Below are positions 6,177-63,500 of a stretch of DNA of 64,000 nucleotides, piece by piece. The position numbers were made by a program, and so were the translations under genes. The stretch comes from Vitrella brassicaformis CCMP3155. Taxonomy: Eukaryota > Protista > Chromerida. Location: positions 62,001 to 126,000 of the forward strand of contig CDMY01000047.1 of NCBI GenBank assembly GCA_001179505.1. Direction: 5' to 3'. Under the pieces are notes generated by a model. That model was not told the origin of the DNA. It worked only from the letters and a program-made list of their open reading frames with translations, and did no database searches. The stretch's first letter is position 1; each line of letters begins with the position of its first letter.

Positions 6177-7656
6177 TCATATCTGCGAGAAAACGGGCGG
6201 CCCCAGGGCCGGCAACCCCTCGCTGTTGGTGGGCGCCACCCCTCTCCCACCGCCACCCGAGCGATAGATGCGCTCCCACTCCCTGGCATGGGCATCCCAC
6301 CTCCCCTCAACGTGCACATGCGGCTGCTGTTGCTGCTGCCACGCACCATGCTGCTCCCTCACATCACTCCACAGTCGCCTTCTCTTGCCCTTGCCCCCGC
6401 CAACCACCCACCGCCACCCCAGCAGCGCCAACACGCCATACACCAGGAACAGGATGAGCAGCAGGAGCGTCAATCTCAGCTGCCGCCGCCGTCTTTGCAG
6501 CTCGCTGTACCCGCCCCGCATGGCCGTGGGAGTGGCGCATGTGCGTGGGTCGGGTGCTGCTGTATGGTCGGTGGTCGAGTAGGGGAGAGGGGGCGACGAT
6601 GCCGAGCGGCTGTGTGGCGTACTCTTGACAAACGTCAAAGGCTCCTGTGGATTGCCGCCGACAGCCGAGCCGTTGGTGCGGGGCGCCCGCAATGGCAGTA
6701 TGGTGGCCGTTGTGTCATTGTCGGCGTCGTCCTGGATGCCTGAGGGAGGCGGTAGGGGGTCCAGCAGCAGCAGCCTACCCGCATGGAAGTTGACGATGCT
6801 CCCGACCTTCTGCGCCAGCTGGACGGCCTGCGGGACGTATGTGTGGTACGACTGGGCCGTGAGGTGCATGAGGGCGCCGGGCAGCCATGCGAGTGTGGCA
6901 CTGAGGTGCCTGAGCCGCCCTCCCAGCGTCGTGGCATTGTCACAGATCTGGTCGAGGAACCATGTGTTGAGGTCCAGCAGCTGATTGAAGTGGCCCAGTG
7001 AGTCAGCCATACCCCCGAACCAGCTGCCGTCGTTGCTGTACATGCCGTAGCCGTAACCGTAGGGCATTCCGCCATATGTGCTGTAGCCGCCATACCCCCC
7101 GCCGTAACCACCGTAAGCCGCCCCGCTCCGCCACCCATAGCCACTGTACGCACTGGGCCGATTATACGATTGTGGATAGCTGCTGTAGCTGGCCCCGTAG
7201 CCCGTGTTCATGAAGGTGCCGGAGGGATACGACGACATGTACGATGGCACGGCCGTCGACGAAGAGAGGGCACCGCCGGGCGCCTGTTGTGCAGCGCCAG
7301 CCGGAGCAGCTGCGCTCGGGAGAAGGTTGCTGCCGTCGGTCGCAGCTGGTGGCGCACGAGTGAACGGAACGACGGCATTGGAATTGCTGACACTGAAGCA
7401 CCAAGAAAAACACACCAGCAAGCTTTCAAGTCTTCCCTTCCACGCCCATCTGGCTTTGTCACCTGGCTGATGCCCCAGCAGCAGCTGGTTCTGGCGCGGG
7501 CACAGTACTGGACGCCGCTAGCTCCTCTGTGTTTGTTGGCTGCGGCTGTGACGGCGAGGGCAGAGGTGAAGAGGTGGAGTGAGGGAGAGGTGACGGTGCG
7601 AGAGATGCACCTGCCGGTAGTGTGCGACGCTGCCACGGCTTCGGAGGCGCCGCCAT
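6177..7656 (-). CDS. PEX13: PEX13-like peroxisomal membrane protein (no SH3 seen); 3' end uncertain, a further exon near 5850-5930 is possible
   Basis: Starts MAAPPKPWQ, followed by a YG-rich tract (YGGYGGGYGGYSTYGGMPYGYGYG), the segment SLGHFNQLLDLNTWFLD and a hydrophobic TM segment. Three exons splice in frame. Confidence 0.7.
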
Positions 7657-9627: not shown

Positions 9628-9927
9628 NNNNNNNNNNNNNNNNNNNNNNNNNNNNNNNNNNNNNNNNNNNNNNNNNNNNNNNNNNNNNNNNNNNNNNNNN
9701 NNNNNNNNNNNNNNNNNNNNNNNNNNNNNNNNNNNNNNNNNNNNNNNNNNNNNNNNNNNNNNNNNNNNNNNNNNNNNNNNNNNNNNNNNNNNNNNNNNNN
9801 NNNNNNNNNNNNNNNNNNNNNNNNNNNNNNNNNNNNNNNNNNNNNNNNNNNNNNNNNNNNNNNNNNNNNNNNNNNNNNNNNNNNNNNNNNNNNNNNNNNN
9901 NNNNNNNNNNNNNNNNNNNNNNNNNNN
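9628..9927. other. Assembly gap (300 N)
   Basis: N run flanked by G homopolymer. Confidence 0.99.
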
Positions 9928-9984: not shown

Positions 9985-10423
9985 TCTGCCCATATGACAT
10001 TCATCATTGTCTCTTGCTCGGCCTTCAGACATATCTCGTCGCCTGAAGCGCGCATTGATTGAATATATTGAAAGAATCCGATTCGTGTGCGAGAGCAGAC
10101 AGGTCCAAATCATCATCCTATGAGCACATGAGACCGTCCAAGAGATCAACACACACACTCTCCTATGAGACACTCACTCAATCCAAGAGATCAACACACA
10201 CACTCTCCTATGAGACACTCACTCAACTACCTTAACTCCTCAAAAATGGCCCATTGCACACACCGCGAGAGCGCACACACACACACACATGCTGTACAAA
10301 CCACCACAGAAGCTGCCTCCGTCAAATACTTCGTACCTATACCCCAGCACCGACCATCCATCTCACATCAACCGACATATCCCTCCCTCCCTCCCTCCCT
10401 CTCTCGCTGACTCGACACGTCGG

Positions 10424-13400
10424 TCACCTGGACTTGGGTGAGAGCGTCTTGAACTCATAGGCCAATGGATCGTCCAGATTGTCTATCTCAAGCCCCTCAG
10501 GCTCGTCCTTTTCCGCCCTTCTCGCAGTCGGCGATTCGGGCTTGTCCGGCTTCTCCACTTGAGGGAAAAAACTGGTCGGAGTCACGGCCGCAATGTGCGC
10601 CGGTGTGGGCCCCATCGACATGACACCGGTAGAGAAACGATGGCCCCCTACAGCGACCCCTACAGGTGTTTGCCCGATCGGCGGCATGTCATTCTCCTCC
10701 TCCACTCCGCCATGGTCGGTGTCCTCCTCGGGGGCGGTGATCCTGATCTTCTCGGGGGAGAGGCCGTCAGTTCTGTGCTCATAGGGGGGCATTGGGGGTA
10801 GCACCTGCAGCTCGGGGCTGGCCGCTTTCTCGATGTCCTCGTATGTCTCTCCACCGAGGGTTTGGTAAGCCTTTGGCGACCTGGGCGGCGACGAGCGGAT
10901 GTCGATGTGGTCGGCAGTGTGCGGGTGCGGGATCTCTGCCGATGACCGTGACTTGATCCACCTCCTGTAGCAGAACCACCCCACCACAGAGACGAGCAGT
11001 AGAGCCCCGACCACGCAGAAGATGACAACCAGGGTCGTTAGCTCCTCATCCTTGCCGCCGTCCTTGTCGACGCCGCTCCCGTCAGGGGGAGGGACGACGA
11101 TGGCGCCACTGTCGCCGACCACGAGGACAGGGTTTGGAGGGCCGAATAAGGGGCCGAGCGCTAAAGGGGAGGGGCCCGGGAGGAAGCCATCACCCTGGAG
11201 GCTCCTGCTGCTTGTATGAAGCGCTCGACGGCTGAACGCAGAGAACAGCACAGCCAGATCGCCGTTCGCGTGCTGCCGATGCAGACTGCTCCCATTCGTC
11301 CTCACCTGGCGGGGCAGTCGACGCCGCAGAAGGGGTCGAGACACATGGTGATGTCGCATGTTAGGTAGACAGTGGTGTATCCCGAGAAGGTGAACGAGTG
11401 TGTCGAGGCCCACGACCACATCTGCATCGAGTGGTGCTCCCACGCTGCCACATTCGGGATCGGCGCACAGTGCTCCTCTAACTGTGAAGGGGTCAAGGGG
11501 TGGGTGGTGAATCAGGCACATGCCATATGCAAGAAAGAAACAAAGGGTGAAGGATCAGAGCAAGAAGTGCCTTCGGCTTGCCATGGTGAATGTGTTCGGC
11601 GATTCAACGACGCTTTTGTCCACGGGGTCAGCCACACACCTCTTGAACACAGGATAAAAGCCACTAGCCTGCACACACACACACACAAAACGGATTGCTC
11701 CGGAACTTTCGCCGATCGGTAGTCTGTGTGTGTCAAAAGACTTGACGTACGGTTGTTTCCGCTCCGTAGTAGTATTTGGTTTGTGACTTGTCGCCGTACT
11801 TGTAGAGCGCCCCCTGCCCACCACCCGAGCACGTCGGGTCCGCACATATGTGGAAGAGCACCTTGAAAGTGCCGCGGTCCTCTACGAAGATGATGTCTGG
11901 GGATGGATAGACAGACAGCCACCAACACAAACGGGATTGTTCCCGTTCGTCTCTCCCTGTCTACTCTCTCTCTTTGTGTCTCTCCGACAAGGATGACTGA
12001 CCAGGGTCGGGCAGGTCGGTCTCATTGAGGGTGTCGTTGTACCAGTGACCGCCGTCCCATGCCGAGTCGCCTCCCGTATTGTTGGTGTTGTTGTACATGG
12101 GGTCCACCCTCGTGGTGAAGTTCCACTCGTGCGGCTCCACCTCTTCCGACGGCAGCTTCTTCTCCAGGCCCAGGAAAGCCCCTTCTACGATCGTGACGTT
12201 GTAGAGGATGGAGTAGTTCAGGGGGGCAATCTCGCACATGACCATTGTCGGGGGATTGCCATACCGGCACTGACAGACAGACGGACAGAGAGGGACAGAT
12301 GGGTGATATCTCTGTCTGTCTGTCTGTTTGTCTGCTTTGTACGGTGGATGTGTCGGTTGCGTCCACTTCGACATCAGAGACGTTGGTGTTGTTGGCCATG
12401 AGCCTTATGGTGCCCTCATCGGGACTTGCCGGCCGCTTGCCAGGCACGACAGGGTCGTCCAGCACGACCACCAGCACAGTGGCGATGCTCACGTTCTTCT
12501 CGTTGACCTTGGGGTACACCAAGTCCAGCAGCACCTGCGGGGCCAGGGGGTCGAAGGGGTAAGCGATGTCGACGGTGGTGAACTGCCAGTTGAGGGGGCC
12601 TGGTGAATTGGGCGTCCAATCGTTGCCCTGCCTGTCAGTGATGACTCCGTCGGCGATGCTGACTTCGTGGAGGGTGTTATCGAGCATGGGCACCAGAGAT
12701 ATCGTCACGGTCCTGCCCGCAAACTTCACCTGAGACACGAGAATGAGAGGTAAGAGCCGAGGTGCTGGCTGGGTGGGTGCTGTATGCCTGCCTGCTCACC
12801 TGGTTTGGATCGTTGATGTCGACGGCGAATGATTGGTCGAAGGGCAGGCCGGGATTGTTGACCTGTGAGGCGGTCACCCGCACCTCACCCTCACCGGGCG
12901 CCACATCCTCGTCAAACATAATCACCTGCAATCAACCAGGCAAGTAACACAAAGCCTGTTTGACGCGGACTTCTCTTGTGTCGTCACCGACCCACCAGGC
13001 TTGTCCCGATGACCGGCACATCCGTCGCACCATCCGAGGGCAAGTACACCACGGCGTTGGGCCCGTCGTTGTCTTTTTTTGCAGCCGTGCGGAAGGTCCA
13101 CTTGTAGCTGGCGGCCTGGTTGCCCGAATAGTCGACGAAGAGGCCTTCTTCCATCCCCACCCGGATCTCTTTATCACCCGGGAAGAAGCGAAGAGGGTTG
13201 ATCACCACCGTTGCACCAATTATCTGCCGCCAGCCACGCCGGAGACGCAGATGCATACGTTCGTGCATGGTAATAAAACCGGCATCAGTGGGTCTTGTTA
13301 CCATGTCGTTAGTGACTGGGAGGACTCGCGCGTCCACGAAGTCGCCGTTGGTCCTCTCCTCGACCGTGAGGGCAGCCGGGTAGGTTAGAGGGGAGCTCGA

Positions 13401-16400
13401 TACGCGGACGTCCTCATTGAACACCAACACTGCAACCAATCAAACAAGTGAGGGGCAACATACGAAGTACTGCATCAGCGTACCCACTGACACATCCGTG
13501 GGCACATTGACGGATTGCTTCTTCGGTCTGAGAAGTTCCTCTATCAGTTGTGGCGGGGTCTTGTCCGGATTGTCAGGTGTCTCGAAGTCGATCTCCTCTC
13601 CGCCGTTTGGATTACCGGCCTCGTCCTCGACAGTGCCGTTGCCGATGGTCACCTTGCAGTCCGACAAAGGCGGCAGCGGCTCCGGCGGACATATCAGCAG
13701 ATACTCACCCTCAATCCTCACCTGACACGAGCACAGAGAGAGAGAGACAGCATAAAGCGACAGAGACACACCCTGTGGACGATCTTACTGTCTCGTCGTT
13801 GACAGGGAAAGTGAGGGTGAAGTCGGGAATGCATATGATGGTGATGGGTGGGGGGTTGTCGGAGCCCGTGAGTGTTTCCACCAGGTCGGGCTCGTAGCTG
13901 AATGGAGGCGGGATGATGCAGTACGGGGGTGGGGGGAACGTGTTCCCGGGGTCAACTGGCGGGAACGGAGGCTTTGGGTACTTGCCAACTGTGGCATCAC
14001 ATACACACAGATACAATGAATGCCATCCCGGCAGTCCAGCCTCTTTCTCTCTCCGCACTCACTGTCTTCGGGGTCGCCGGTGGTGGGCCCCTGCTCGTCC
14101 GTTTGCACGCCAGTGTAGAAGACATAGTCGCTGAATAGGATCTGGCTGCCATCGTGCGCCGTGACCGTGGCGGTGAAGAGGTCGAAGCCGGCTCCGTTAG
14201 TGCCTTCAATGGCCCCCGAGCTGAATGATGCGGATATATTGGACAGCTGGGGGAAGTGAAGGGGCGGCTTGATGACCAGAAGGGGGCCTGACACATACGC
14301 CTGGCAGCACACACGCAAACAAGTGACTGCGTGGGTGTGGATGAGTTAGTGGTGGGCGAGATCACCATGGAAGGGTCTTCCAAGTCAATGATCTGGCCGC
14401 CGGTCGGTTGCCCGTCTTCCATATTGGAAAAATAGAACTGCGCCCCCGGCGTGACGACTATGTCCCGGTCAAAAGTGATACTCACACTCGTTGACACAGA
14501 CACGTCAGGTTCCAATGGCCGCGGCCGCAGGCTGCTGACGGCAGGTCGGGGGAAGTCTTCAGTGATCAGCGTATTGCTGTCGAACTCCTTCTCGAAGGCG
14601 GCGTTGGGCAACCCATCAGGATTCTGTAGAGATGGCCGGGCAAGGATCAGCAAGGATGACGGGTTCTGATATTTGCGTGCCTTGTTCCTTCCCACGCACC
14701 TGAACGAGTCCCTCTGGAGCCTTGAGTGTGAAGCTGGTGTCGGAAGGCAATATCGTCGGGGGATCTAGAATCACCGTCGTCCCCACTACGATCACCTAAG
14801 TGACCAACAACACGCCAGGCTGCACACGACACACACACATACACATGTCTCCCACCTACCTGTTCAGGATCGGTGAGGTCCATCACAATGGGTTCCTTGG
14901 TGGGCGGATCAGGCCCAGTGGGGACAATGACCACTGTCTGGCCGTCGCCCCGCTGCACTGGCTGGTCGAACTCGAGTATGACGCGGTCGTTCTCGGGATC
15001 CACGCGGATGCCGACGAACTGCGGGGGGTTGCCGTAGACTGATGGGGCGACTGTGGTAAAGGTCCACTCTTGGCCTGGAGGGTCGGGGCCGAAGCCGCCG
15101 AAGGGGTTGTCGTTGGGGTCGGTGATGGTGTTGGCCGGAAGAAACACTTCATACTGATAAACAGGGAGAAGAGTGGCATTTGTGTGTGTGCGTTTGAAGT
15201 AGCGCCCACTTTGGTTCCAGATCTGAGTGGCTCCGGCAGGATGATCTTCAGCAGGACATCGTCGGCCAGCAGGCTCACGCCCGTCGCCAGCACGCCCCTT
15301 TCAACCAGGGGCACCTCTATCACATGTCTCCCATCAGTCGCCACCACCAGCAGGACACCGCCAACAACCTCCACCTTCTCGGTGAAGATGACATTCAGGT
15401 CCACCTCAGTCGACACATCCACAGACCCATTCGCAGGCAAGATGGCCGTCACGCCGGGGTTCGTCTCATCGTCCGGTCCGCCTTTCTCTGGCGTGGTCAG
15501 GTTGTCCTCCCCCGTTGGGAACTCGATGTCCTTTTCGGGTGTCTCGTTGCCATTCTCGTCCTCGCCCGTGCACGCCGGAAGCTTTACGATGATCTGGCTG
15601 TTTGGCGGCAGGGGCTCAGGGGGAATGATGACGATCGTACTGCCCTCGATTATCACGTGGTTGCTGTCATTGAGGGGGATCTCTATGTAAGGCTGACCGG
15701 GGGGAGTCTGTATGATGATCTTGCCGTCGTTGACACAGGGCAGGATGGGCTCGGGGATGGGAATGACGATAGGGGCGTCTGGCGGCACGTCCGTCCCGTC
15801 CCTGGGCGGATAGGTGCCGCCGGTGTCGATCGGGGGTGCCTCTGTGTCCGACTGGCCGGAAGTGGTGAACGTCATATCGAAGGCAGCACTCACTGTGGCG
15901 GGAGATGTCTCAGTAAGAGCGACGAAGGCCTCGGCGGGGAGATTGAACTGGTAGTTTGTGCTGGGCTTGAGGTCTCTGGGGGGGTCGATGATCACCGTCT
16001 TGTCCACGACCTGAGACACATTGCACTGGCGGTCGACGAGAGGCAGGTGAGCGACGTTCCCTGTCTTTCTCACCAGGACAGAAATGAGGGGCACCTCCAG
16101 TGTGTCGCTGGCAGGACTCAGAGGCACAAATTGCACCACCCCCGGGGGGTCGGTGGAGACTCCATCCGACCCCGCCAGCCGGTTCAGGGCCACAGGCATG
16201 GAGTAATGCAGCAGCACATTGGTCGTCACAGCCACATTCTGGTCTTCGTTAGCAGGGACGGTCAGCACGGGCTCGAATGGATCCCCCGTGGCTTCAGGCG
16301 GCGTGACGACGGTCGTGAACTGCCACACTGCCTGCTCGTTTGACGAGATCCCCTCCACCGACTTGACCGCCCCGAGTGGCACTGTCACTGTGTACGTTGT

Positions 16401-19400
16401 GCCGGCGGCGAATGGCGCCGAGGGCGTGATGACCAGCACATCGAAGAGCGCCTCCGCGTGCCCGTCGTCAGAGTTGCCTTCTTCGCCGATTCTGATGTAG
16501 AATCTTTTCTTGTCGGCTGAGGGGGTCGACGGGACGATGCGGATCTCCTCCAGGGGAGTGCCCAGAAGCACTCTTATGTCATAGGTGACGACGAGGGGCG
16601 TGACCAGCGGCGCGTTTTCACTGTCGGGCAGGGGTGTGAAGCCTACTGCTTTTGGGGCGGTCAAGTCGAGTGGTCGTTGTGTGCGGAACGAGTAGGTGTT
16701 GGGTGGAAGCGGCTCGCTAGGGTTGCCGTAGGGGTCGGTGAGGAGACCCGGGGGGAACTGCAGTTCAATGTCAGTGACACTGGGGTAGGCCAGCGAGGGC
16801 GCAATGAACAGAAGATTGTCAGAGATGGACACCTGCAGCAACCCACACAGAGTCGCGGGCGAGTGAGTGGGGCCTGCTCTTCCAGCACCCCATCGATCAG
16901 CACGTGTCACCTGTTGCTGGTCGTGTATGTCGATGGCGATCGAGAATGCGGCGCCAGGCCTCTTGTCATAAATGAAGATGCTGCCCCTGCCGCGTACGAT
17001 GGGTTCGTCGAAGGGGAACATGATGTCGTTTTGCGTCATTGCCACGATGCTGCCGCGCCGGGGGATGGCCAGCTGCGGCAGAGGCACGGGGCCCTTGTCA
17101 TCCACCGTCCCCTCAAAGGTGAATCGCCATTCGAAAGACCTGTGTGTCCATGCAACGCAGAAAAGGAGATCCACGCCACCCTGGTGGTGTCTCTCTCTCA
17201 CTCACTCCTGTTCCCAGATGTTGCCGGCCTCGTCGCGAATGAGCCCATAGGGGATGTCCACCCTGTACTCGGCCAGCGGCAGCAGCACCCTGCTCTCGGG
17301 GAGGAAGAACCGCACGTCATTGTCCATGACCCAGTAGAACGACGGGTCGTTGGGGATGACCACAACCGGGCCTCCGGCAGTCAGGGGCGTCAGCGTGATG
17401 GCGGCGTTGGACGCTGCCACGACGATGGGCTCGTCGAACCGCATCTGGATCATGTCCAGTGCCAGCAACACGCCCGTCTCCTCGTGATCAGGAGCCAACG
17501 CACTCACACCCACATCGCGCTCTGTAACAAGCCAACCATCCAGTGATGGACGGACGTGTCTCTGCCTGCCTGCTGCTGCCCACCGAGGTCGGGCGGAGTT
17601 GTATCGTCGTTTGCCTTTGTCGTGAAGCTGAAGGTCTCAACTTTCGGTGAGAGGTTGCCCGCGGGGTCCTTGACGAGGCCGGGTGGGAGGACCACAGTGA
17701 TGAGCTGATCGGGGGGGAAGGCGAAGGGCGGGGATATCGTCAGCACGTTGCCCGCGATGCTCATGATCTTGTTCAGGAGACTCTCGAGAAGGTCCAGGAT
17801 CAGGGATGGGGGGTCGAGGCCCACAGAGGGCTGCAGCGCACGACCTACAACACCATGCAACACATACGGAGGGACACACGTCATTGTGTACATGCGGGAG
17901 TGCATATGGTGTGTCCCACTTACTTCTGCGTGAGATGGGTTCTGGTTTGAACACGATGTTGCCCTGTGCCGGCAGAATGGGCTCGCTGAATGGCAGGAAG
18001 AGGCTCGTCTTGGGGTCCACGTCCACACTGCCGTCCCGCGGCACCAGCTCGTTGTACAATAGATATGGACCGCTGCAACCGATTTACCAAAACCAAACCA
18101 TGTCACCCTTTCCACTCGCCAGCTCACTCACCTATTATCAATGTCCCCGTCAGCAGTGGTGAACCGCCACCTGACCGCCGCAGCAGCGTTGCCCACGGTG
18201 TCTGCCACAGCGGCCTCGGTGAGCAGCACCTCATAGACCATGTTGGGCAGCAGCCTCTTAAGAGGGACGACCAGGGCGGCCCCCAGGACCATCAGAGGCG
18301 ATATCACCACCTGGAAAGATTCCTCCTCGCTGGACAGGCGCAGCTGATACACACACAAATGAAGGATGGGAAAGGCAGATGTCTCGGCTCCGCGAGGGAT
18401 GGGAATGTCCGCTCACCGCTCCGCCGTTTTCGCGTATTTCTTCGTTGAATACGATGAGCACGTCTGAGTCGAGTGTGACGTTCTCTGCCTCATGTGGCGG
18501 TGACAGCAGCCGCACCTCTGGCGGCTCCCTGTCGGCCTCCACACAACCCTCCGCAAACCCCTTGTACCAAAGGTAGATCCAGTCACCTGCAGACACATAC
18601 ACACACAGTTAAGAAAAGCCATATCTATCTGGGATAATGGCGTGTTTCCGAGGAAGAACCATCGATCTTGCACACGTGTGCTGGCTGCTATACCTACCTT
18701 CGTTTGCGACTGGTTTGAGGTCAGGGTCGGTGTAGACAGGGTCGCTGCCGGCCTCCTGCAGCACCCGCAGGCCCGTCTCAGAGTTGAAGAGACAGAACAA
18801 TGCCTGCATCCGAGACACGTCCACCCCAGCCGCACAGATGGTAGTGTCGGTGATCTCAGCCGGACACCTGATATGCATGTAATCAACACCAACACCCATC
18901 CTTGAACGGCGTTTGTCATGTCTCTGCGGCAGTCACTGACCGACCTTGGGTCACGGTCTTCGCCTGGTGGGGTCTCCTGCATGGACGGCAGCAAGGCCTC
19001 GAGCAGGACAGTCCCCTCGCCGGGCGCGGCGTCTTGCGGCTGGAGGTATAGCAACGGCTGCGGCCGTGTCTCCAGGATCGAGTAGACCTCCACTGCGATC
19101 ACTATCGAAAAATTCTGCAGGTTCGTGCCTGTTCGTTGGTTGGGCGATAGGGGAGAGGGAGACATGACAGACACCCATGGGACCCGATGTATGTCTGCAG
19201 TTGTTTGTGTGAGCAAACGTACCTTACCTTGACCGTAGGGTATCATGAATGCACTCTCCTCGCATCCCTCCATGATGAGCCTGCCGTCGTCTAGCCTCCC
19301 CGTGCAGTTCATGGGGGCGTCCCAGGGCGACTTGTCCTTGCAGTCCTTGTCGAAATCCCACGATCCACCGGGGTCGGGCGGCAAGTCTGCACACACCAAG

Positions 19401-20039
19401 AGACAGAGATGGTGTGGTTGGTGGTGATGTGTGCGGATGTGGATGAGGATGAGGATGTGTGTGTGGGTGTACATCATGGCGTGCCTGGTATGGTGACATT
19501 GGCCTCGTTGTCGATCTGGACGGTGAGCGAGACGTCATAGCTCCCCTGGTAGTAGCACCTGGCCGTGATGGCCGGCGGTGACTCAGCGCCTCCGAAAATG
19601 GGTGTGCCGGGCGGGATACTGCCGATACAACAAACAAGCCACACAATGTCATGTGTGCATGCGCTCATTATCATGACTATTCCGCTTACGCCGCCACATT
19701 CTCGATGGTGATGACGCTCGTGGCGTTGTCCTGGGAGATGGTGCTCCCACATGGGTTTGTAACCGACTGTCCGTCGACAGTAGCCTCAAGCGGGGCGAAC
19801 AAACACTTCTGCTGTACGCCCTGTGGGGATGTCCGTGTGACCGACTTGCAGACATCATACTCAGTGGAAGTGCCGCCCTCCCAGTACCAGTCGTGTGCTC
19901 CCGAGCTGGCCAGGGGGAGGCACAGCTGCATGCCGTCAGACAAGCAGTCGGGCTTTATCGCACTCCACACCGGCGGGCCGCGACACACACCCAGCAAGCA
20001 GCACACGAGGACGCATGTGAGAAGAGGGGAACGCCGCAT
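10424..20039 (-). CDS. Large type-I membrane protein: signal peptide, ZP-N-like, about 14 Big_5/SbsA Ig-like repeats, ZP-C-like, TM, Pro/acidic tail
   Basis: Signal MRRSPLLTCVLVCCLLGVCRG. Repeats have the pattern D..PP....P......V.....I...F.E.I ... D..GN......W.FTT. Cys-patterned ZP-like ends. TM LTTLVVIFCVVGALLLVSVVGWFCY followed by RR. Stop at 10424. Confidence 0.85.
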
Positions 20040-20233: not shown

Positions 20234-22085
20234 ATGTCTTGGTTTTCGCGATTCAGCGGGTCGAGCTGCAAGGCACATCTTAAGATGACAGTCAACAGAG
20301 GTGAGAGCAGCATAGACAGACATCGACACACACGCTGAGATCAGAGGCAGGCACGGCGTCGGCATTTGTGTCTGTGTGTGTGTGTTTGTGTGTGTCGTGC
20401 GTCAGCCAAGCTGTCTCAGAACAAGCTGGAGAACAACAAGAAGGCGCTGCGTCGCGAGATGGCCCATCTGCTTCGCGAGGATAAGGAGGAGAAGGCCCGC
20501 ATCAAGGCCGAGCAGTTCCTCCAGGATCAGAAGATGGAGTGCGCTTTGGACATACTCGAAACCATGTGCGACCTGCTCGCCACACGGATGGTGAGTGAGC
20601 ATCACCCCAGCAACAGACAGACAGCTGTCGTGTGCGCCTACTTGACGGCGTGTGCACCGTCGATGTGATGTGTGTCAGCGCTACATCGAGAGTGAGAAGG
20701 ACTGCCCCTCTGACCTCTCGGGCACCATTGCCTCCGTCCTCTACTGCGAGAAACGGGCAGGCATCGACGATTTGGCAGAGGTTCGGAAGCAGTTTGAGAT
20801 CAAGTACGGGCGTGAGTTCGTCGAGACGGCAGCCGACAACAAGAACCAGGAGGTACACTTCAAGTTGGTGCAGCTGCTGAGCGTCATGCCGCCCGCCGAG
20901 CATGAGGTCGTCAAGGTCCTCAAGGACGTCGCTGCAGAGTACGACGTACAGTGGAACGCACCACCTGAACCCGCTGAGGTAAGACAAGACAGACACGCAG
21001 GCAGGCAGGCAGGCGGGGAGAGATGGAGGGCTACCATCGTTACGCATGTGTGTGTGCATGTGTGTGTATCGGTGTCATCCATCAATAATCCATCAGCCGT
21101 CATTATCTGACTTCAATGACATGGTCCACGAGGCCACTGAGGGGGGAGACGCATTCGTCCCAAGGGTACGGGGAGTGAGTGGAACAGCCAGGCAGGCAGG
21201 CAGCCCAGGCAGACACTCTTCGCGGCCTTCGCTCTCACCATTAATCCGTGACATCTCCGTATGTCCTTGTTTCGCCTGTGTGTGCTGTGGTGTGCAGCCG
21301 TCAGCTCCAGGTCCGTATGGATACCCCTTCCCAGTGCAGGTGCAGGGCGGCATGCCCATGGCGGTGCCGTACCCCCCATACCCGCCACAGCAGCAGCAGC
21401 AGCCGGTGCCCTCTGGGATGCCCCAAGGGGCCCAGCCCTCCATGCCCCCGCCGTACAAGTCATTCGTCGGAGCCGCCGGACAGTTCCCCAGCATGCCACC
21501 ACCACCACCAGGTCTGACAGGAGTGCTTATCCCCCTTACGGATGGATCGATGCTCTTCACACGTGTGTGTGTGTGTCTATCATTGGCTGGCCATGTCAGG
21601 TCCTCCGGCAATGATGGGTGGTGGTCCGGGTGGGGGTGTTTCCGATGCGTCAGCGGCCTCAGCAACGCTGCAGGACAAGATGGCCTACCACGACAGCCAC
21701 CCCATGCCACCCAATGTGACACCACAGCCATCACCGTCGCCGTTCCCCGCCAGCAGCGACTCGGCAGCACCACCCCCCAGTGGGAATGTGAGCGGCGCAC
21801 CACCACCCGTGCAGACGATGCAGCCCCCCGCAGGTGCACAGGAGCCAGAGAGCCAGGTGGCTGTCAACGGCGGCTTCCCCCCCTTTGTGGCGGGGCCCCA
21901 GAAGCCCTACGGAGAGGTCAGTGGCAGGCAGGGTGGGGGGGCGATGTGTGCAGTGCAAAGGTGGGACGGCGTGGGTGGATCTCTGTGTGTGTTGCTGTGG
22001 TGTGGTGTGGTGTGTGCAGGACACGCAGGGTGGCGGCAATGACGCATATGACCTGAACCAGAGGATACAGAATCTGCGCAGATAG
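20234..22085 (+). CDS. IST1: IST1 homolog (ESCRT-III/Vps4 regulator)
   Basis: MSWFSRFSGSSCKAHLKMTVNRAKLSQNK...EKARIKAEQFL...CDLLATRM and KQFEIKYGREF, then a Pro-rich linker and C-terminal MIM-like DLNQRIQNLRR*. Confidence 0.9.
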
Positions 22086-33614: not shown

Positions 33615-33914
33615 NNNNNNNNNNNNNNNNNNNNNNNNNNNNNNNNNNNNNNNNNNNNNNNNNNNNNNNNNNNNNNNNNNNNNNNNNNNNNNNNNNNNNN
33701 NNNNNNNNNNNNNNNNNNNNNNNNNNNNNNNNNNNNNNNNNNNNNNNNNNNNNNNNNNNNNNNNNNNNNNNNNNNNNNNNNNNNNNNNNNNNNNNNNNNN
33801 NNNNNNNNNNNNNNNNNNNNNNNNNNNNNNNNNNNNNNNNNNNNNNNNNNNNNNNNNNNNNNNNNNNNNNNNNNNNNNNNNNNNNNNNNNNNNNNNNNNN
33901 NNNNNNNNNNNNNN
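33615..33914. other. Assembly gap (300 N) with duplicated flanks
   Basis: aaagtggcgtgacctaaggatctacgtgatgccccc is present on both sides of the gap. Confidence 0.97.
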
Positions 33915-37546: not shown

Positions 37547-37846
37547 NNNNNNNNNNNNNNNNNNNNNNNNNNNNNNNNNNNNNNNNNNNNNNNNNNNNNN
37601 NNNNNNNNNNNNNNNNNNNNNNNNNNNNNNNNNNNNNNNNNNNNNNNNNNNNNNNNNNNNNNNNNNNNNNNNNNNNNNNNNNNNNNNNNNNNNNNNNNNN
37701 NNNNNNNNNNNNNNNNNNNNNNNNNNNNNNNNNNNNNNNNNNNNNNNNNNNNNNNNNNNNNNNNNNNNNNNNNNNNNNNNNNNNNNNNNNNNNNNNNNNN
37801 NNNNNNNNNNNNNNNNNNNNNNNNNNNNNNNNNNNNNNNNNNNNNN
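37547..37846. other. Assembly gap (300 N)
   Basis: N run after G homopolymer. Confidence 0.99.
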
Positions 37847-51426: not shown

Positions 51427-51726
51427 NNNNNNNNNNNNNNNNNNNNNNNNNNNNNNNNNNNNNNNNNNNNNNNNNNNNNNNNNNNNNNNNNNNNNNNNNN
51501 NNNNNNNNNNNNNNNNNNNNNNNNNNNNNNNNNNNNNNNNNNNNNNNNNNNNNNNNNNNNNNNNNNNNNNNNNNNNNNNNNNNNNNNNNNNNNNNNNNNN
51601 NNNNNNNNNNNNNNNNNNNNNNNNNNNNNNNNNNNNNNNNNNNNNNNNNNNNNNNNNNNNNNNNNNNNNNNNNNNNNNNNNNNNNNNNNNNNNNNNNNNN
51701 NNNNNNNNNNNNNNNNNNNNNNNNNN
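51427..51726. other. Assembly gap (300 N) with duplicated flanks
   Basis: gtgtg-G(n)-atcgatg is present on both sides. Confidence 0.97.
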
Positions 51727-60563: not shown

Positions 60564-63500
60564 ATGTCGGCGGGCGCTCCGGCCGATGCATCGAATGAGG
60601 ATACCATTGCTGCTGTGTTGCCTCAGCGCCGCCAATTTCACACGGTCCTGACGCAATACTGCCAGCAGGCAGAGCCGAACCTGAAGTGCCCCATCTGGTA
60701 ACAGACAAACAGGCAATTGACGGCTCGATTCGCAATGCATTTCATCTTTCTTTCTCCTGTGCGTTCTGCTTGCAGCGATAGGTTGTTCGATGACCCTCGC
60801 GCCGGTCCATGCAGCCACTTCTACTGCCGGGAGTGCATCTTGGCGCACATTCACATACGGTGCGAGTGCCCCGTCTGCAGAAACTACCTATGGTGAGTGA
60901 GGTTCCCATTCGTATCTGCCGCAACAATACGATGAGTGCCCACACAAAGGAAAGGCCACCTCCCATCTGCTCTCTGTTTGCATGCGCAGCCCTCGTGACT
61001 TGCGCAAGATCGGCCTGCTAGAGAGGATGGTGACGGCCTTCACGGCCCTCCGCCAGCTATTGGACAACATTCCCGATGAGCCTCACGAGGAGGCTGCTGC
61101 AGCAGCACACGACCAGCCGCCCATGCAGCTCGACGATGGCAGGGATGGCAATGGAGCGGACGGAGAGGACGGACACAGAGGGGAGGAGGAGGAGGCCGCA
61201 CCAGCTGCTGCAGCAGCAGCTGCTGCCGGACCGGCTGCTGCTGCTGGGGCATCGTCTGCTGCGCACATGGATGGGGGAAATCGGCGTGTGGTGACCACAC
61301 AGGTGGGGGATGATGAGCGCCACGACCACACGCACGAACCAGACATTACTGGTATGTGTGTCTGTGCGCTGGCTGGTTTCGTTGGTCAGGACGTCGATGC
61401 CATCGAGCGTGATCTGGCGGAGGCTCAGCCTCTGGATGCGAAGATCACGAGCCTCCTCCTCGCATTCGACAGAGGAGAGTTCTCCATACCGCCAGGCATA
61501 CAGGTGTGGCAAAATGCCAAACAACCGTCGTCCTGCATCCATTCATAGCTGCATGCCCGTTTTCGCTTCTTTCTTTCTTTTTCAGTTGCCGTCGACAATT
61601 CCTCATCCAGAGAGTGCCCCTGCTGCCCACTCAGAGCCGCCAGGAGAACCCGACGCAGCAGCAGCCCCCGCAAGACCTCAGAGCGAGTCGCTGCCCCCGC
61701 TGGCCGCCGCATCCCCTCCTCATGATCACCACGATGATGACGATGCCCCGCCCGCCCCTCGCTCCCCTCCATCCCCCAGCCCTTCGCCACCCCAGGCGGC
61801 CATCGACGATGAACCGCCCCCACCTGACGATCCACCAGCTGCTCAAGAGGACGCTCCGGCCCAGCGAGATGGTGGTTCTCCCAGCGTCATTGTCGATTCC
61901 AACGGTCAGGAGGTGCGGGCCGTCGATAGCATCACCGACCTCCTCTTCGCTTCACAGCCGGTCGTTCTGAGGCCCAGGAGGGCCGTGACGTCAACGGGCC
62001 CACGAGAAGAGCCGCCGATCGTCATCGCTGATGAGAGCAGGAACGCGGAGGAGCCGCCCGGGGAGCAGCAGCCTGAGGAGGGGCAGCAAGATGGAGAGAA
62101 GGCTGCAGAGGGCGGGGAGGGGGCGGATCATGATGTGGACATGGAGGATCCGCGGCAAGGTGACGAGGAGCGGCCAGACAATGCAGATGTGGAGGACATA
62201 GATGAGCCCGTCGATAGAGATCGATACCATGGCGACCATGACGACCATGACAACAACAACCGTGCATCCGGTGGCCCCCCCCCACACGACGACGAGCCCC
62301 AAGGCATCAGCCCCATCCTGCGACGGCACCCACACCCGCCCCCAGACCGCCCTCCTCTCGTCAAGCGAGAAGACGAGGTCCTATCCATCGAGTCAAGCCC
62401 ACCAGCGTCGAAACATCGGCCCCAGGCAAAGGCCCCTCCCTCTCGGCTGCCGGCACATGACCATGTGGAGGAGATAGAGGAGCCCGACACCCCGCCCAAG
62501 CCGAACAGGCAGCCATGCGACAATTGGAAGTTCCCTCTCGGACGCGACCGTGGCTTCGTCAGACCTCCTGGGGCCAGGCTGGAGGGGCTGGGGCGCAAGG
62601 GGATGGGAGAGAGACGGCATCTGGGGAGTGCTGTGAGGCCCCCACCACCACCTCCAGCTGCTGCTGCAGCTGCGGCTGCGGCTGCTGCGCCGCGGGTGGC
62701 TTTGAGGCCGCCAGGTGGCGCTGGGATGATGTCGATGGATCTGTTTGGTGAGCGGGGGGAATCAGCCCCCGACCCTCCTGCGGGTGCGGCGGCGGCTGCA
62801 GCAGCGGCCTTGCCCACTCCGTCCCCTCCCTCCCCGCCCCGCAAGAATCGCAAGACATTCGACTGGCGACACTCGGATGAAGGCGAGAGAAAAGAAGGCA
62901 GCATCGCAAAAAGGGAGGAGGTCAAGGATGGGACACCTGCGGGTGATGGCGCCTGTCGGGGCAGTAGGGGCGGGGGTGGTGATGCGCTTGTGGCCGACGG
63001 GGAAAGGGAAAGGGGAAGGGCGGCGGGCGATGAGATGCAGATCGATATGGAGGTGGATATGGCTGTAGATAGAGCGCCTGTGGCGGTGCCGCCCGCCATC
63101 ACTGCGCCGGTGCGTGTGGTGCTGCTGGGCAGCAGCATCGACGAGGAGATGCTCAAGACCATGAAGCAAGCATGCGAGTGAGCGACGCGCACGCACACGT
63201 GCGTTCGAGTGCCGATAGTGATGCACACATATGTGATCCGTTCGTGCGTGTTGACGCGTCCAGGTTGATGCCAGGCACTGTCGTGATGCGATGGACGCCG
63301 AGCGTGACCCATCTGGTCGTGGCTGTCGACGATCAGCAGAGGGTCATCAATCGTACCATGAAGTACTTCATGGTACGTTCGCTCATACGCAGAGGCCAAG
63401 GCGCATGCTCATGTCTCTTTCCTGCTTCCCTTTCTCAGGCGCTGTTGGGCAGCCAGTGGATCGTGACGACTGAGTGGCTGGAGGCGTCGCTGCACAACAA

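What the first reader, a model, noticed from the sequence alone, without database searches (positions are those of the whole stretch)
11306..11896. ZP-C (zona pellucida C-terminal)-like domain in a non-animal eukaryote
Three minus-strand exons (11896-11751, 11668-11582, 11481-11306) splice in frame to DIIFVEDRGTFKVLFHICADPTCSGGGQGALYKYGDKSQTKYYYGAETTASGFYPVFKRCVADPVDKSVVESPNTFTMLEEHCAPIPNVAAWEHHSMQMWSWASTHSFTFSGYTTVYLTCDITMCLDPFCGVDC (seen). Element by element it follows the ZP-C pattern as I recall it from uromodulin: IHP + G.F.V, LYVG, C.ATP, FII...C, F.F...VYLHC.V.LC...C...C (knowledge from memory, not a computed alignment). The provided ORF track hides it because the exons are short and one donor is GC. 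ZP modules are regarded as hallmarks of animal extracellular matrices.
Basis: partly seen in the sequence, partly recalled or inferred. Interest (0 to 1): 0.88.

Follow-up and report, generated by a model that had tools for sequence, protein, structure and literature searches.

The report
ZP-C egg-coat domain in alga
A giant surface protein of the alga Vitrella, a free-living relative of malaria parasites, very probably ends in the second half (ZP-C) of the "zona pellucida" module that animals use to build egg coats and other filaments, a module that reviews still treat as animal-only.

Summary
The three minus-strand exons (11896-11751, 11668-11582, 11481-11306) give the quoted peptide. Spliced transcript contigs from three runs carry exactly these junctions, including the GC-AG intron. 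They are exons 25-27 of a 28-exon gene (20039-10424) whose annotated product is a 2523-aa Vitrella brassicaformis protein, named only as an SbsA Ig-like protein.

Evidence for ZP-C at residues 2119-2254:
- It is the only Pfam hit (E 5e-5 to 1.2e-4, 22.6-23.9 bits), just under the 24.6-bit gathering score.
- All ten nearest language-model clusters are ZP-C families. A control region of the same protein gives none.
- The last 45 residues hit only uromodulin in the whole PDB (E 0.8). That alignment matches F-x-F and all four terminal cysteines.
- Six cysteines have ZP-C spacing.
- An RR site, an EHP-consensus ALGPL, a TM helix and a 180-aa tail follow.

Weak points:
- The fold is untested, because AlphaFold2 without an alignment failed.
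- No homologue of this domain exists in any database searched.
- The upstream neighbour is a Big_5 Ig domain, not ZP-N, so this is not a canonical ZP module.

I put ZP-C homology at about 0.8. The scan has noted other ZP-module genes on other DNA of this genome, and notes on this gene's head, Ig array and tail.

The parts
10424..20039 (-). Whole gene: 28 exons, 27 introns (25 GT-AG, 2 GC-AG), CDS 20039..10427 plus TGA stop. Product is P0001, 2523 aa.
   Evidence: P0001 maps exactly onto the window. Spliced transcript contigs support it.
11751..11896 (-). Exon 25, aa 2119-2167. First third of the ZP-C-like domain, with beta-strand candidates IIFVED and TFKVLF and an extra Cys pair at 2136/2141. 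The Pfam profile does not align this part.
11582..11668 (-). Exon 26, aa 2168-2196. Carries Cys5 candidate C2178 in C-V-A-D-P. It ends at the GC donor.
   Evidence: (joint 11481|11582, ends CT..GC).
11306..11481 (-). Exon 27, aa 2197-2254. Carries Cys6 (2201), F-T-F (2226-2228), Cys7 (2238), CysA (2243), CysB (2248) and Cys8 (2252).
   Evidence: This exon alone hits PF00100.
11225..11230 (-). Dibasic site R2256-R2257, four to five residues after Cys8. Candidate consensus cleavage site.
   Evidence: A dibasic pair in the first 10 residues occurs in 3.9% of shuffles of this region. Cleavage itself is inferred.
11147..11161 (-). A-L-G-P-L (aa 2279-2283). Fits the published 90% consensus of the external hydrophobic patch, small-x-G-P-aliphatic.
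   Evidence: The consensus is taken from PMC9692296. The chance of this motif in this Gly/Pro-rich stretch is 0.25, so it is weak alone.
10967..11041 (-). Transmembrane helix, aa 2319-2343.
   Evidence: Kyte-Doolittle 19-residue mean up to 2.84.
10424..10966 (-). Cytoplasmic tail of 180 aa plus stop codon. No family match.
11232..11305 (-). Intron 27 (74 nt, GT-AG).
11482..11581 (-). Intron 26 (100 nt, GC-AG).
11669..11750 (-). Intron 25 (82 nt, GT-AG). Contains a (TG)n run.
11897..12001 (-). Intron 24 (105 nt, GT-AG).
12002..18586 (-). Exons 6-24, aa 333-2118. Array of Big_5 (SbsA-type) Ig-like domains that runs right up to the ZP-C-like domain. The last domain ends ...WNFTT and is followed by a sequon-rich linker.
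   Evidence: Pfam PF13205, E 3.4e-95, 11 stretches. The exon 23 piece hits Big_5.
19485..20039 (-). Exons 1-2, aa 1-161. Signal peptide and a Cys-containing head that resembles ZP-N by language-model features only.
   Evidence: ZP-N clusters, score 0.93, but recognition 1718, below the tool's reliability mark. No Pfam hit.

Best explanation
Residues 2119-2254 of this Vitrella surface protein are a divergent but genuine ZP-C domain. It sits at the canonical place in a ZP-type precursor: it is the last extracellular domain, and it is followed by a basic cleavage site (RR 2256-57), an external hydrophobic patch (ALGPL 2279-83), a membrane anchor (TM 2319-43) and a cytoplasmic tail.

By analogy with uromodulin and egg-coat proteins, the protein would work as follows. 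It is made as a membrane-anchored precursor in which the EHP strand completes the ZP-C sandwich and blocks assembly. A protease cuts at RR. The EHP leaves with the anchor, and the freed ZP-C (F-x-F face and vacated strand slot) binds another subunit. The long rods of about 11-14 Ig domains are thereby joined, possibly head-to-tail through the ZP-N-like N-terminus, into a coat or wall matrix.

Shown here: the gene model, the transcription, the profile and motif matches, and the topology elements. Inferred: the fold, the disulfide pairs (5-7, 6-8, A-B), the cleavage and the polymerisation.

My probability that the domain is a ZP-C homologue is about 0.8. The confidence given here is for homology plus the cleavage-activated assembly mechanism together.
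For: - The splicing and frame are proven by transcripts and by the exact mapping of the annotated protein.
- PF00100 ZP-C is the only Pfam hit for every slice tried, at E 5e-5 to 1.2e-4 and 22.6-23.9 bits, over profile positions 45-126 of 133.
- ESM Atlas features give a first hit at 0.93 with 201 of 256 shared features. All ten best family-bearing hits are in the ZP-C families, and recognition is 2483, above the tool's 2300 mark. The control region aa 165-345 of the same protein gives no ZP family and only 88 shared features.
- phmmer of the last 45 aa against 177,635 PDB sequences returns one sequence, uromodulin 28yj_A. Its alignment matches F-x-F, G-Y and all four cysteines.
- Cysteine spacing is C5-C7 60, C7-CA 5, CA-CB 5, CB-C8 4. 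The nematode core alignment has 55, 5, 4 and 8 (PMC7456536).
- RR lies 4 residues after C8. ALGPL fits the EHP consensus s.GPl (PMC9692296). The TM helix and signal peptide are present. RR and the EHP motif occur together in 1% of shuffles.
- The mechanism template is from PMC7737619.
Against: - The Pfam score never reaches the curated 24.6-bit cut-off, and the related models CUT_C and VERL_C do not hit.
- Profile positions 1-44 (beta-A/IHP to beta-B) are not aligned.
- The uromodulin hit has E 0.8, so it is not significant alone. Longer slices do not hit any ZP structure.
- The AlphaFold2 single-sequence model is unusable (pLDDT 34), so the fold is untested.
- No homologue of the domain was found, so conservation of the cysteines cannot be checked. 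The searches were an exhaustive phmmer of exon 27 over 1.84 billion proteins, word-indexed searches and metagenomes.
- RR is not a full furin consensus (R-x-K/R-R).
- The domain directly upstream is Big_5, not ZP-N with an interdomain linker. In uromodulin the strand that replaces the EHP comes from that linker, so that strand has no obvious counterpart here.
- The IHP consensus is too degenerate to test (103 matches in the protein).
Confidence: 0.55

Rival explanations
1. The domain is a genuine ZP-C but does not polymerise. It would be a standalone, membrane-proximal ZP-C that serves as a stalk or binding module for a cell-surface adhesin and stays anchored. Models are the ZP-C domains of endoglin and betaglycan or the nematode standalone ZP-C proteins. 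RR and ALGPL would be incidental.
For: - The evidence for ZP-C identity is the same as above.
- No ZP-N or interdomain linker lies next to it; the upstream neighbour is Big_5.
- Standalone ZP-C domains exist in nematodes, and binding roles for ZP-C are documented (PMC7456536).
- The 180-aa cytoplasmic tail would suit a receptor or adhesin that stays in the membrane.
- The EHP-like motif alone has a 25% chance expectation.
Against: - The F-x-F motif, which in uromodulin forms the polymer interface, is kept at the same distance from Cys7.
- RR directly after Cys8 together with an s.GPl motif before the anchor is the arrangement of polymerising precursors (1% joint chance).
- The N-terminal head resembles ZP-N by language-model features (weak).
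Confidence: 0.22
2. The domain is not a ZP-C. It would be an unrelated cysteine-rich beta domain whose C-terminal Cys cluster and flanking motifs resemble ZP-C by chance or convergence.
For: - The Pfam score is below the gathering threshold.
- Only about 60% of the profile is aligned.
- The PDB hit has E 0.8.
- The language-model search gives leads without statistics, and by the tool's own note a third of shuffled proteins also get ten concordant hits.
- No fold model exists, and no homologues exist to show conservation.
Against: - Three different methods all point to the same family and to nothing else: a profile HMM at E about 1e-4, language-model features with 201 shared features and recognition above the reliability mark, and a pairwise PDB search.
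- The control region of the same protein gives no such signal.
- The position in the protein and the downstream cassette match the family independently of the domain's own sequence.
Confidence: 0.18
3. The ZP-C sequence is animal DNA, either assembly contamination or a recent transfer from an animal such as the coral host.
For: ZP modules are otherwise described from animals (PMC13361971). From my own knowledge, Vitrella was isolated from a coral.
Against: - The domain is split by three introns of the same short type as the other 24 introns of the gene. It is spliced into one 7.7-kb transcript with the Big_5 array.
- The gene lies on a 203,914-bp Vitrella contig.
- GC content is uniform at about 57-58% across the gene.
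- No animal protein is similar enough to be found by sequence search.
Confidence: 0.03

Closest known systems
Uromodulin / ZP3-type ZP-C domain with its maturation cassette (CCS, EHP, membrane anchor)
   Same: It matches the ZP-C profile. F-x-F, Cys7, CysA, CysB and Cys8 align to a solved uromodulin chain. Candidates for Cys5 and Cys6 lie at family-typical distances. A basic site follows directly after Cys8, then an s.GPl EHP motif, then a membrane anchor. It has a signal peptide and a heavily N-glycosylatable ectodomain.
   Different: No adjacent ZP-N or interdomain linker is present. The anchor is a TM helix with a 180-aa tail rather than a GPI anchor or a short tail. The cleavage site is RR only. 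There is an extra Cys pair near the start. The organism is an alveolate alga. Sequence similarity is too low for pairwise significance.
Nematode standalone ZP-C proteins (T01D1.8, F46G11.6, CUTL-19; PMC7456536)
   Same: A ZP-C without a neighbouring ZP-N. Extra lineage-specific cysteines occur near beta-A and the AB loop.
   Different: Those are small secreted animal proteins derived from full ZP modules by ZP-N loss, and they often lack the C-terminal cassette. This one is the tail of a 2523-aa Ig-array protein and keeps the cassette.
ZP-like sequences of choanoflagellates (Salpingoeca rosetta), as described in PMC13361971
   Same: ZP-like sequence outside animals that lacks the full canonical bipartite module.
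   Different: Choanoflagellates are the sister group of animals. Vitrella is an alveolate, on the other side of the eukaryote tree, so a holozoan origin cannot explain it. I did not compare the sequences.
Bacterial SbsA/Big_5 giant surface proteins
   Same: The body of the protein is an array of Big_5 Ig-like domains. The nearest non-self relatives of the array are giant Big_5 proteins without source names (P0005, 24% identity over 93% of the array).
   Different: Those proteins carry CopC, FlgD_ig or fn3 domains, and none has a precomputed PF00100 hit. The ZP-C tail, the TM helix and the spliceosomal introns are specific to the Vitrella gene.
Other ZP-module genes of the same genome, noted by this scan on other DNA (e.g. 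s1-201633, s1-248669, s1-080116)
   Same: Same organism. Secreted proteins are reported there with ZP-N plus ZP-C and basic cleavage sites.
   Different: Those are described as contiguous modules with relatives in gregarines and Cryptosporidium. This ZP-C has no detectable relative and is separated from any ZP-N-like part by about 1800 residues. I could not fetch those proteins to compare them.

Membership tests
ZP-C domain (Pfam PF00100) | Significant match to the ZP-C profile HMM at or above the curated gathering score | tested here: inconclusive
   It is the only Pfam hit, at E 5e-5 to 1.2e-4 and 22.6-23.9 bits, against a gathering score of 24.6. It covers profile positions 45-126 of 133. 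The match is statistically significant but under the curated cut-off.
ZP-C domain (Pfam PF00100) | Conserved cysteines Cys5, Cys6, Cys7, CysA, CysB and Cys8 in family-typical order and spacing | tested here: met
   The cysteines are C2178, C2201, C2238, C2243, C2248 and C2252. The last four align to uromodulin cysteines. The C7-CA distance is 5, as in the nematode core alignment.
ZP-C domain (Pfam PF00100) | Disulfide connectivity 5-7, 6-8, A-B | not testable with these tools
   This needs a confident model or mass-spectrometric mapping.
ZP-C domain (Pfam PF00100) | Ig-like beta-sandwich fold | tested here: inconclusive
   AlphaFold2 without an alignment gave mean pLDDT 34, which is unusable. 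It predicts only beta strands. No homologues were available to build an alignment.
ZP-C domain (Pfam PF00100) | F-x-F motif before Cys7 (polymer interface in uromodulin) | tested here: met
   F-T-F at 2226-2228 aligns to F-Q-F of uromodulin. The motif's role is from PMC7737619.
ZP-C domain (Pfam PF00100) | Conservation of the domain in related proteins | tested here: not met
   No relative of this region was found in 1.84 billion representatives, in the 5.8-billion word-indexed set or in metagenome contigs. This shows a singleton, not a contradiction of the fold.
ZP-type precursor (maturation cassette) | Consensus cleavage site shortly after Cys8 | tested here: inconclusive
   RR lies at 2256-57, four residues after Cys8. 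It is dibasic but not R-x-K/R-R. Cleavage is not shown.
ZP-type precursor (maturation cassette) | External hydrophobic patch (consensus small-x-G-P-aliphatic) between the cleavage site and the anchor | tested here: met
   ALGPL at 2279-83. The consensus is from PMC9692296. The chance expectation is 0.25.
ZP-type precursor (maturation cassette) | C-terminal membrane anchor and N-terminal signal peptide | tested here: met
   TM helix at 2319-2343 and a hydrophobic N-terminus.
ZP-type precursor (maturation cassette) | Internal hydrophobic patch (beta-A) | tested here: inconclusive
   The published consensus p..ls.t matches 103 places in the protein, so it does not discriminate. IIFVED is a plausible beta-A only by inspection.
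Canonical bipartite ZP module (ZP-N + linker + ZP-C) | ZP-N domain directly upstream, joined by an interdomain linker | tested here: not met
   The upstream neighbour is the last Big_5 domain plus a glycosylated linker. A ZP-N-like head lies about 1950 residues away. It is supported only by language-model neighbours with low recognition and has no Pfam hit.
Canonical bipartite ZP module (ZP-N + linker + ZP-C) | Demonstrated polymerisation into filaments | not testable with these tools
   Experimental.

The most novel reading that the evidence does not exclude
The protein is a 'split ZP module'. A ZP-N-like head and a ZP-C tail sit at opposite ends of a rod of about 11-14 bacterial-type Ig domains. 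After cleavage at RR the rods join head-to-tail through a ZP-N:ZP-C contact and build the wall or coat of Vitrella cells or sporangia. That would mean the ZP polymerisation mechanism is not an animal invention. Either it is far older than animals, or it moved anciently between animals and alveolates.
Probability: 0.25. Interest if true: 0.9.

Novelty: new variant of a known kind. Interest (0 to 1): 0.72.

Why it matters
A 2026 review defines the canonical ZP module as a metazoan synapomorphy and admits only incomplete ZP-like sequences in choanoflagellates (PMC13361971). The chromerid genome paper lists Big_5 among extracellular domains but has no mention of ZP in its text or held supplements. 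My literature searches found no paper linking ZP domains to chromerids or apicomplexans.

A ZP-C with its cleavage, EHP and anchor cassette in an alveolate alga therefore bears on where the ZP matrix-assembly machinery came from. It offers a non-animal, culturable system in which to test whether propeptide-controlled ZP assembly works outside animals. The architecture, with ZP-C capping a bacterial-type Ig array, has no described counterpart. Because Vitrella is a close free-living relative of apicomplexan parasites, such proteins may also inform how cyst and oocyst walls are built.

Tried and rejected
- AlphaFold2 on aa 2105-2300 without an alignment gave pLDDT 34, so I ran no fold search on it. 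I did not use the second structure job, because no alignment could be built.
- Searches for homologues of the domain all returned only the protein itself or spurious hits:
  - exhaustive phmmer of exon 27. Its three other hits are a beta-helix protein, a multihaem cytochrome and a T9SS protein, matched in several stretches of a W/H-rich piece, and they are unrelated by Pfam;
  - a word-indexed search of the 196-aa domain at E up to 10;
  - a search of the C-terminal 494 aa among long proteins;
  - a JGI metagenome scan.
- The search with the Big_5 array, meant to find paralogues with a similar tail, gave only giant Big_5 proteins without PF00100.
- phmmer of the 171-aa and 87-aa slices against PDB gave only a chance hit to histidinol-phosphate aminotransferase.
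- The IHP consensus was rejected as uninformative.
- Contamination or recent animal transfer was rejected (see rivals).
- The read joints 11687->12311/12313 and similar ones in X5, X6 and X7 were rejected as splicing. They link microsatellite-bearing introns and carry unrelated letters between the sides (tables 5 and 5c).
- Large ORFs elsewhere in the window gave no Pfam family.
- A profile-profile comparison with animal ZP-C alignments could not be run, because no tool returned animal ZP sequences as usable ids and I did not type sequences from memory.
Full report

Yes. Reading the minus strand and splicing 11896-11751, 11668-11582 and 11481-11306 reproduces the quoted 136-residue peptide. 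The first codon uses a G carried over from the exon that ends at 12002. The flanks are canonical: AG acceptors, GT donors after exons 25 and 27, and a GCAAG donor after exon 26.

Public runs hold the locus. Laying four of them on 10400-16000 shows assembled transcript contigs in X1, X5 and X7 with exactly these joints: 11231|11306, 11481|11582 (CT..GC on the plus strand, which is GC..AG on the minus strand), 11667/8|11750/1, 11896|12002 and 12269|12343. One 7704-nt X5 contig spans nearly the whole mRNA.

An exhaustive phmmer of exon 27 found a 2523-aa protein that is 100% identical over the exon (P0001). Its sources name it as an unnamed product of Vitrella brassicaformis CCMP3155, and UniRef calls it an "SbsA Ig-like domain-containing protein". 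Its precomputed Pfam annotation is PF13205 only. P0001 maps without a mismatch onto the window as 28 exons, 20039 to 10427, with a TGA stop.

The splice signals fix the strand. Plus-strand ORFs under the region are unsupported.

**2. What surrounds it?**

The protein has these parts, in order:
- a hydrophobic signal peptide;
- a Cys-containing head, about aa 22-165;
- an unassigned region, aa 165-345;
- an array of Big_5 Ig-like domains (PF13205, E 3.4e-95, 11 stretches) that runs to residue about 2085 and is followed by a linker rich in N-x-S/T sequons;
- the 136-residue domain under study.

Exon 28 continues in frame with S-R-R-A. It then carries a Gly/Pro-rich stretch containing A-L-G-P-L (2279-83), a transmembrane helix (2319-43, hydropathy up to 2.84) and a 180-residue tail with no family match.

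**3. Is the domain a ZP-C?**

Four computed lines agree.

(a) Pfam. Exon 27 alone hits only PF00100, the ZP-C model, at E 0.006. The spliced domain scores 22.6-23.9 bits, E 5e-5 to 1.2e-4, over profile positions 45-126 of 133, in five different slices of the domain region (the full-length protein scores 17.1 bits, E 0.0061). No other family appears even at E up to 10. The curated gathering score of 24.6 bits is narrowly missed.

(b) Language-model features (ESM Atlas). The first hit scores 0.93 with 201 of 256 shared features. All ten best family-bearing hits belong to the ZP-C families PF00100, CUT_C and VERL_C. Recognition is 2483, above the tool's 2300 mark. As an internal control, aa 165-345 of the same protein returns no ZP family and at most 88 shared features.

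(c) Solved structures. phmmer of the last 45 residues against all 177,635 distinct PDB sequences returns a single sequence, a uromodulin chain (28yj_A). The alignment matches F-x-F, G-Y and all four terminal cysteines. Its E-value of 0.8 is not significant on its own.

(d) Cysteine pattern. The cysteines are C2178 (in C-V-A-D-P), C2201, C2238, C2243, C2248 and C2252. This gives C5-C7 60, C7-CA 5, CA-CB 5 and CB-C8 4. The trimmed nematode ZP core alignment has 55, 5, 4 and 8 (PMC7456536). An extra pair at 2136/2141 lies near the start, where lineage-specific extra disulfides are known.

**4. The downstream cassette**

This evidence is independent of the domain's own sequence. ZP precursors have a consensus cleavage site after Cys8, then an external hydrophobic patch that forms the last ZP-C strand, then a membrane anchor (PMC7737619; PMC9692296). 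Here RR lies four residues after Cys8. ALGPL fits the published 90% EHP consensus (small-x-G-P-aliphatic). A TM helix follows.

In shuffles of this 66-residue stretch the EHP motif alone appears 25% of the time, a dibasic pair in the first ten residues 3.9% of the time, and both together 1% of the time. This is supportive, but it is post hoc.

**5. What speaks against it, or could not be tested?**

- The Pfam score is sub-threshold.
- The IHP consensus is too degenerate to test (103 matches in the protein).
- AlphaFold2 without an alignment failed (pLDDT 34).
- No alignment could be made, because the domain has no detectable relative anywhere. Neither the fold, nor the disulfide pairing, nor conservation of the cysteines is tested.
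- RR is not a full furin consensus.
- No ZP-N adjoins the domain. A canonical bipartite module is therefore excluded here.
- The distant N-terminal head resembles ZP-N only by language-model neighbours, with recognition below the reliability mark, and it has no Pfam hit.

**6. How it most likely works**

I put homology to ZP-C at about 0.8. The template is uromodulin (PMC7737619). By that analogy, the protein is a membrane-anchored precursor whose EHP strand keeps ZP-C closed. Cleavage at RR would release the ectodomain from the EHP and the anchor, and would expose the F-x-F face and the vacated strand slot for binding to another subunit. Long Ig rods would thereby be linked into a coat, possibly head-to-tail through the ZP-N-like head. 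Every step after the sequence features is inferred.

The main functional rival is a non-polymerising, membrane-retained ZP-C stalk or binding module. The long cytoplasmic tail and the lack of an interdomain linker favour this. The main identity rival is a chance or convergent Cys-rich domain. Contamination or recent animal transfer is excluded in practice: the introns are native, there is a single spliced 7.7-kb transcript, the contig is 204 kb, and no animal protein shows pairwise similarity.

**7. Comparison with what is known, and novelty**

[quoted passage not shown] Standalone ZP-C domains are known only from nematodes. The chromerid genome paper lists Big_5 proteins but has no mention of ZP in its text or held supplements. 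Three literature searches found nothing that links ZP to chromerids or apicomplexans.

This scan has itself noted at least eight other ZP-module genes on other DNA of the same genome. It also holds notes on this gene's head, Ig array and tail. I treated those as leads and tested only what lies in this window.

I file the domain as a probable ZP-C in a new lineage and a new architecture. That makes it a new variant of a known kind, not a canonical ZP module.

Noticed in passing
window 11669-11750 and 12270-12342 (also 14796-14859): The introns carry microsatellites, (TG)n and (GACA)n. In one search these produce depth spikes of 10-40 fold and many false 'joints' (e.g. 11687->12311) with unrelated letters between the two sides. 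These are repeat artefacts, not splicing.
   Followed up: partly
window 19387-19484 and 11482-11581: Two of the gene's 27 introns use GC-AG. By my own recollection that is well above the roughly 1% typical of eukaryotes. It may be a Vitrella trait worth counting genome-wide.
   Followed up: no
window 12002-18586 (aa 333-2118): The nearest non-self relatives of the Big_5 Ig array are giant proteins without source names that carry Big_5 plus CopC, FlgD_ig or fn3 domains (P0005, 3604 aa, 24% identity over 93% of the array). They look bacterial. This hints at a prokaryotic origin of the array onto which the ZP-like ends were grafted.
   Followed up: partly
window 18550-19386 approx. (aa 165-345): The Cys-containing region between the ZP-N-like head and the Ig array has no Pfam family. 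Its language-model neighbours are unnamed clusters with few shared features. It is unexplained.
   Followed up: partly
window 9628-9927, 33615-33914, 37547-37846, 51427-51726: There are four runs of exactly 300 N, which are scaffold gaps. The first lies about 500 bases downstream of this gene's stop codon.
   Followed up: no
window 13559: One contig of run X6 reads G where the window has T. Among the four runs laid on 10400-16000 it is the only base difference that one search listed.
   Followed up: no
window 6180-7421(-), 21046-22053(+), 61310-63178(+) and five other long ORFs: Eight long ORFs elsewhere in the window have no Pfam family at E 0.001. I did not work out the neighbouring genes.
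   Followed up: partly
P0002, P0003, P0004 (not in window): The exhaustive phmmer search of exon 27 reported three unrelated proteins at E 5e-9 to 2e-5, matched in 4-10 stretches each. They are a beta-helix protein, a multihaem cytochrome and a T9SS protein. These hits appear to be driven by composition, from the W/H-rich piece of the query.
   Followed up: yes
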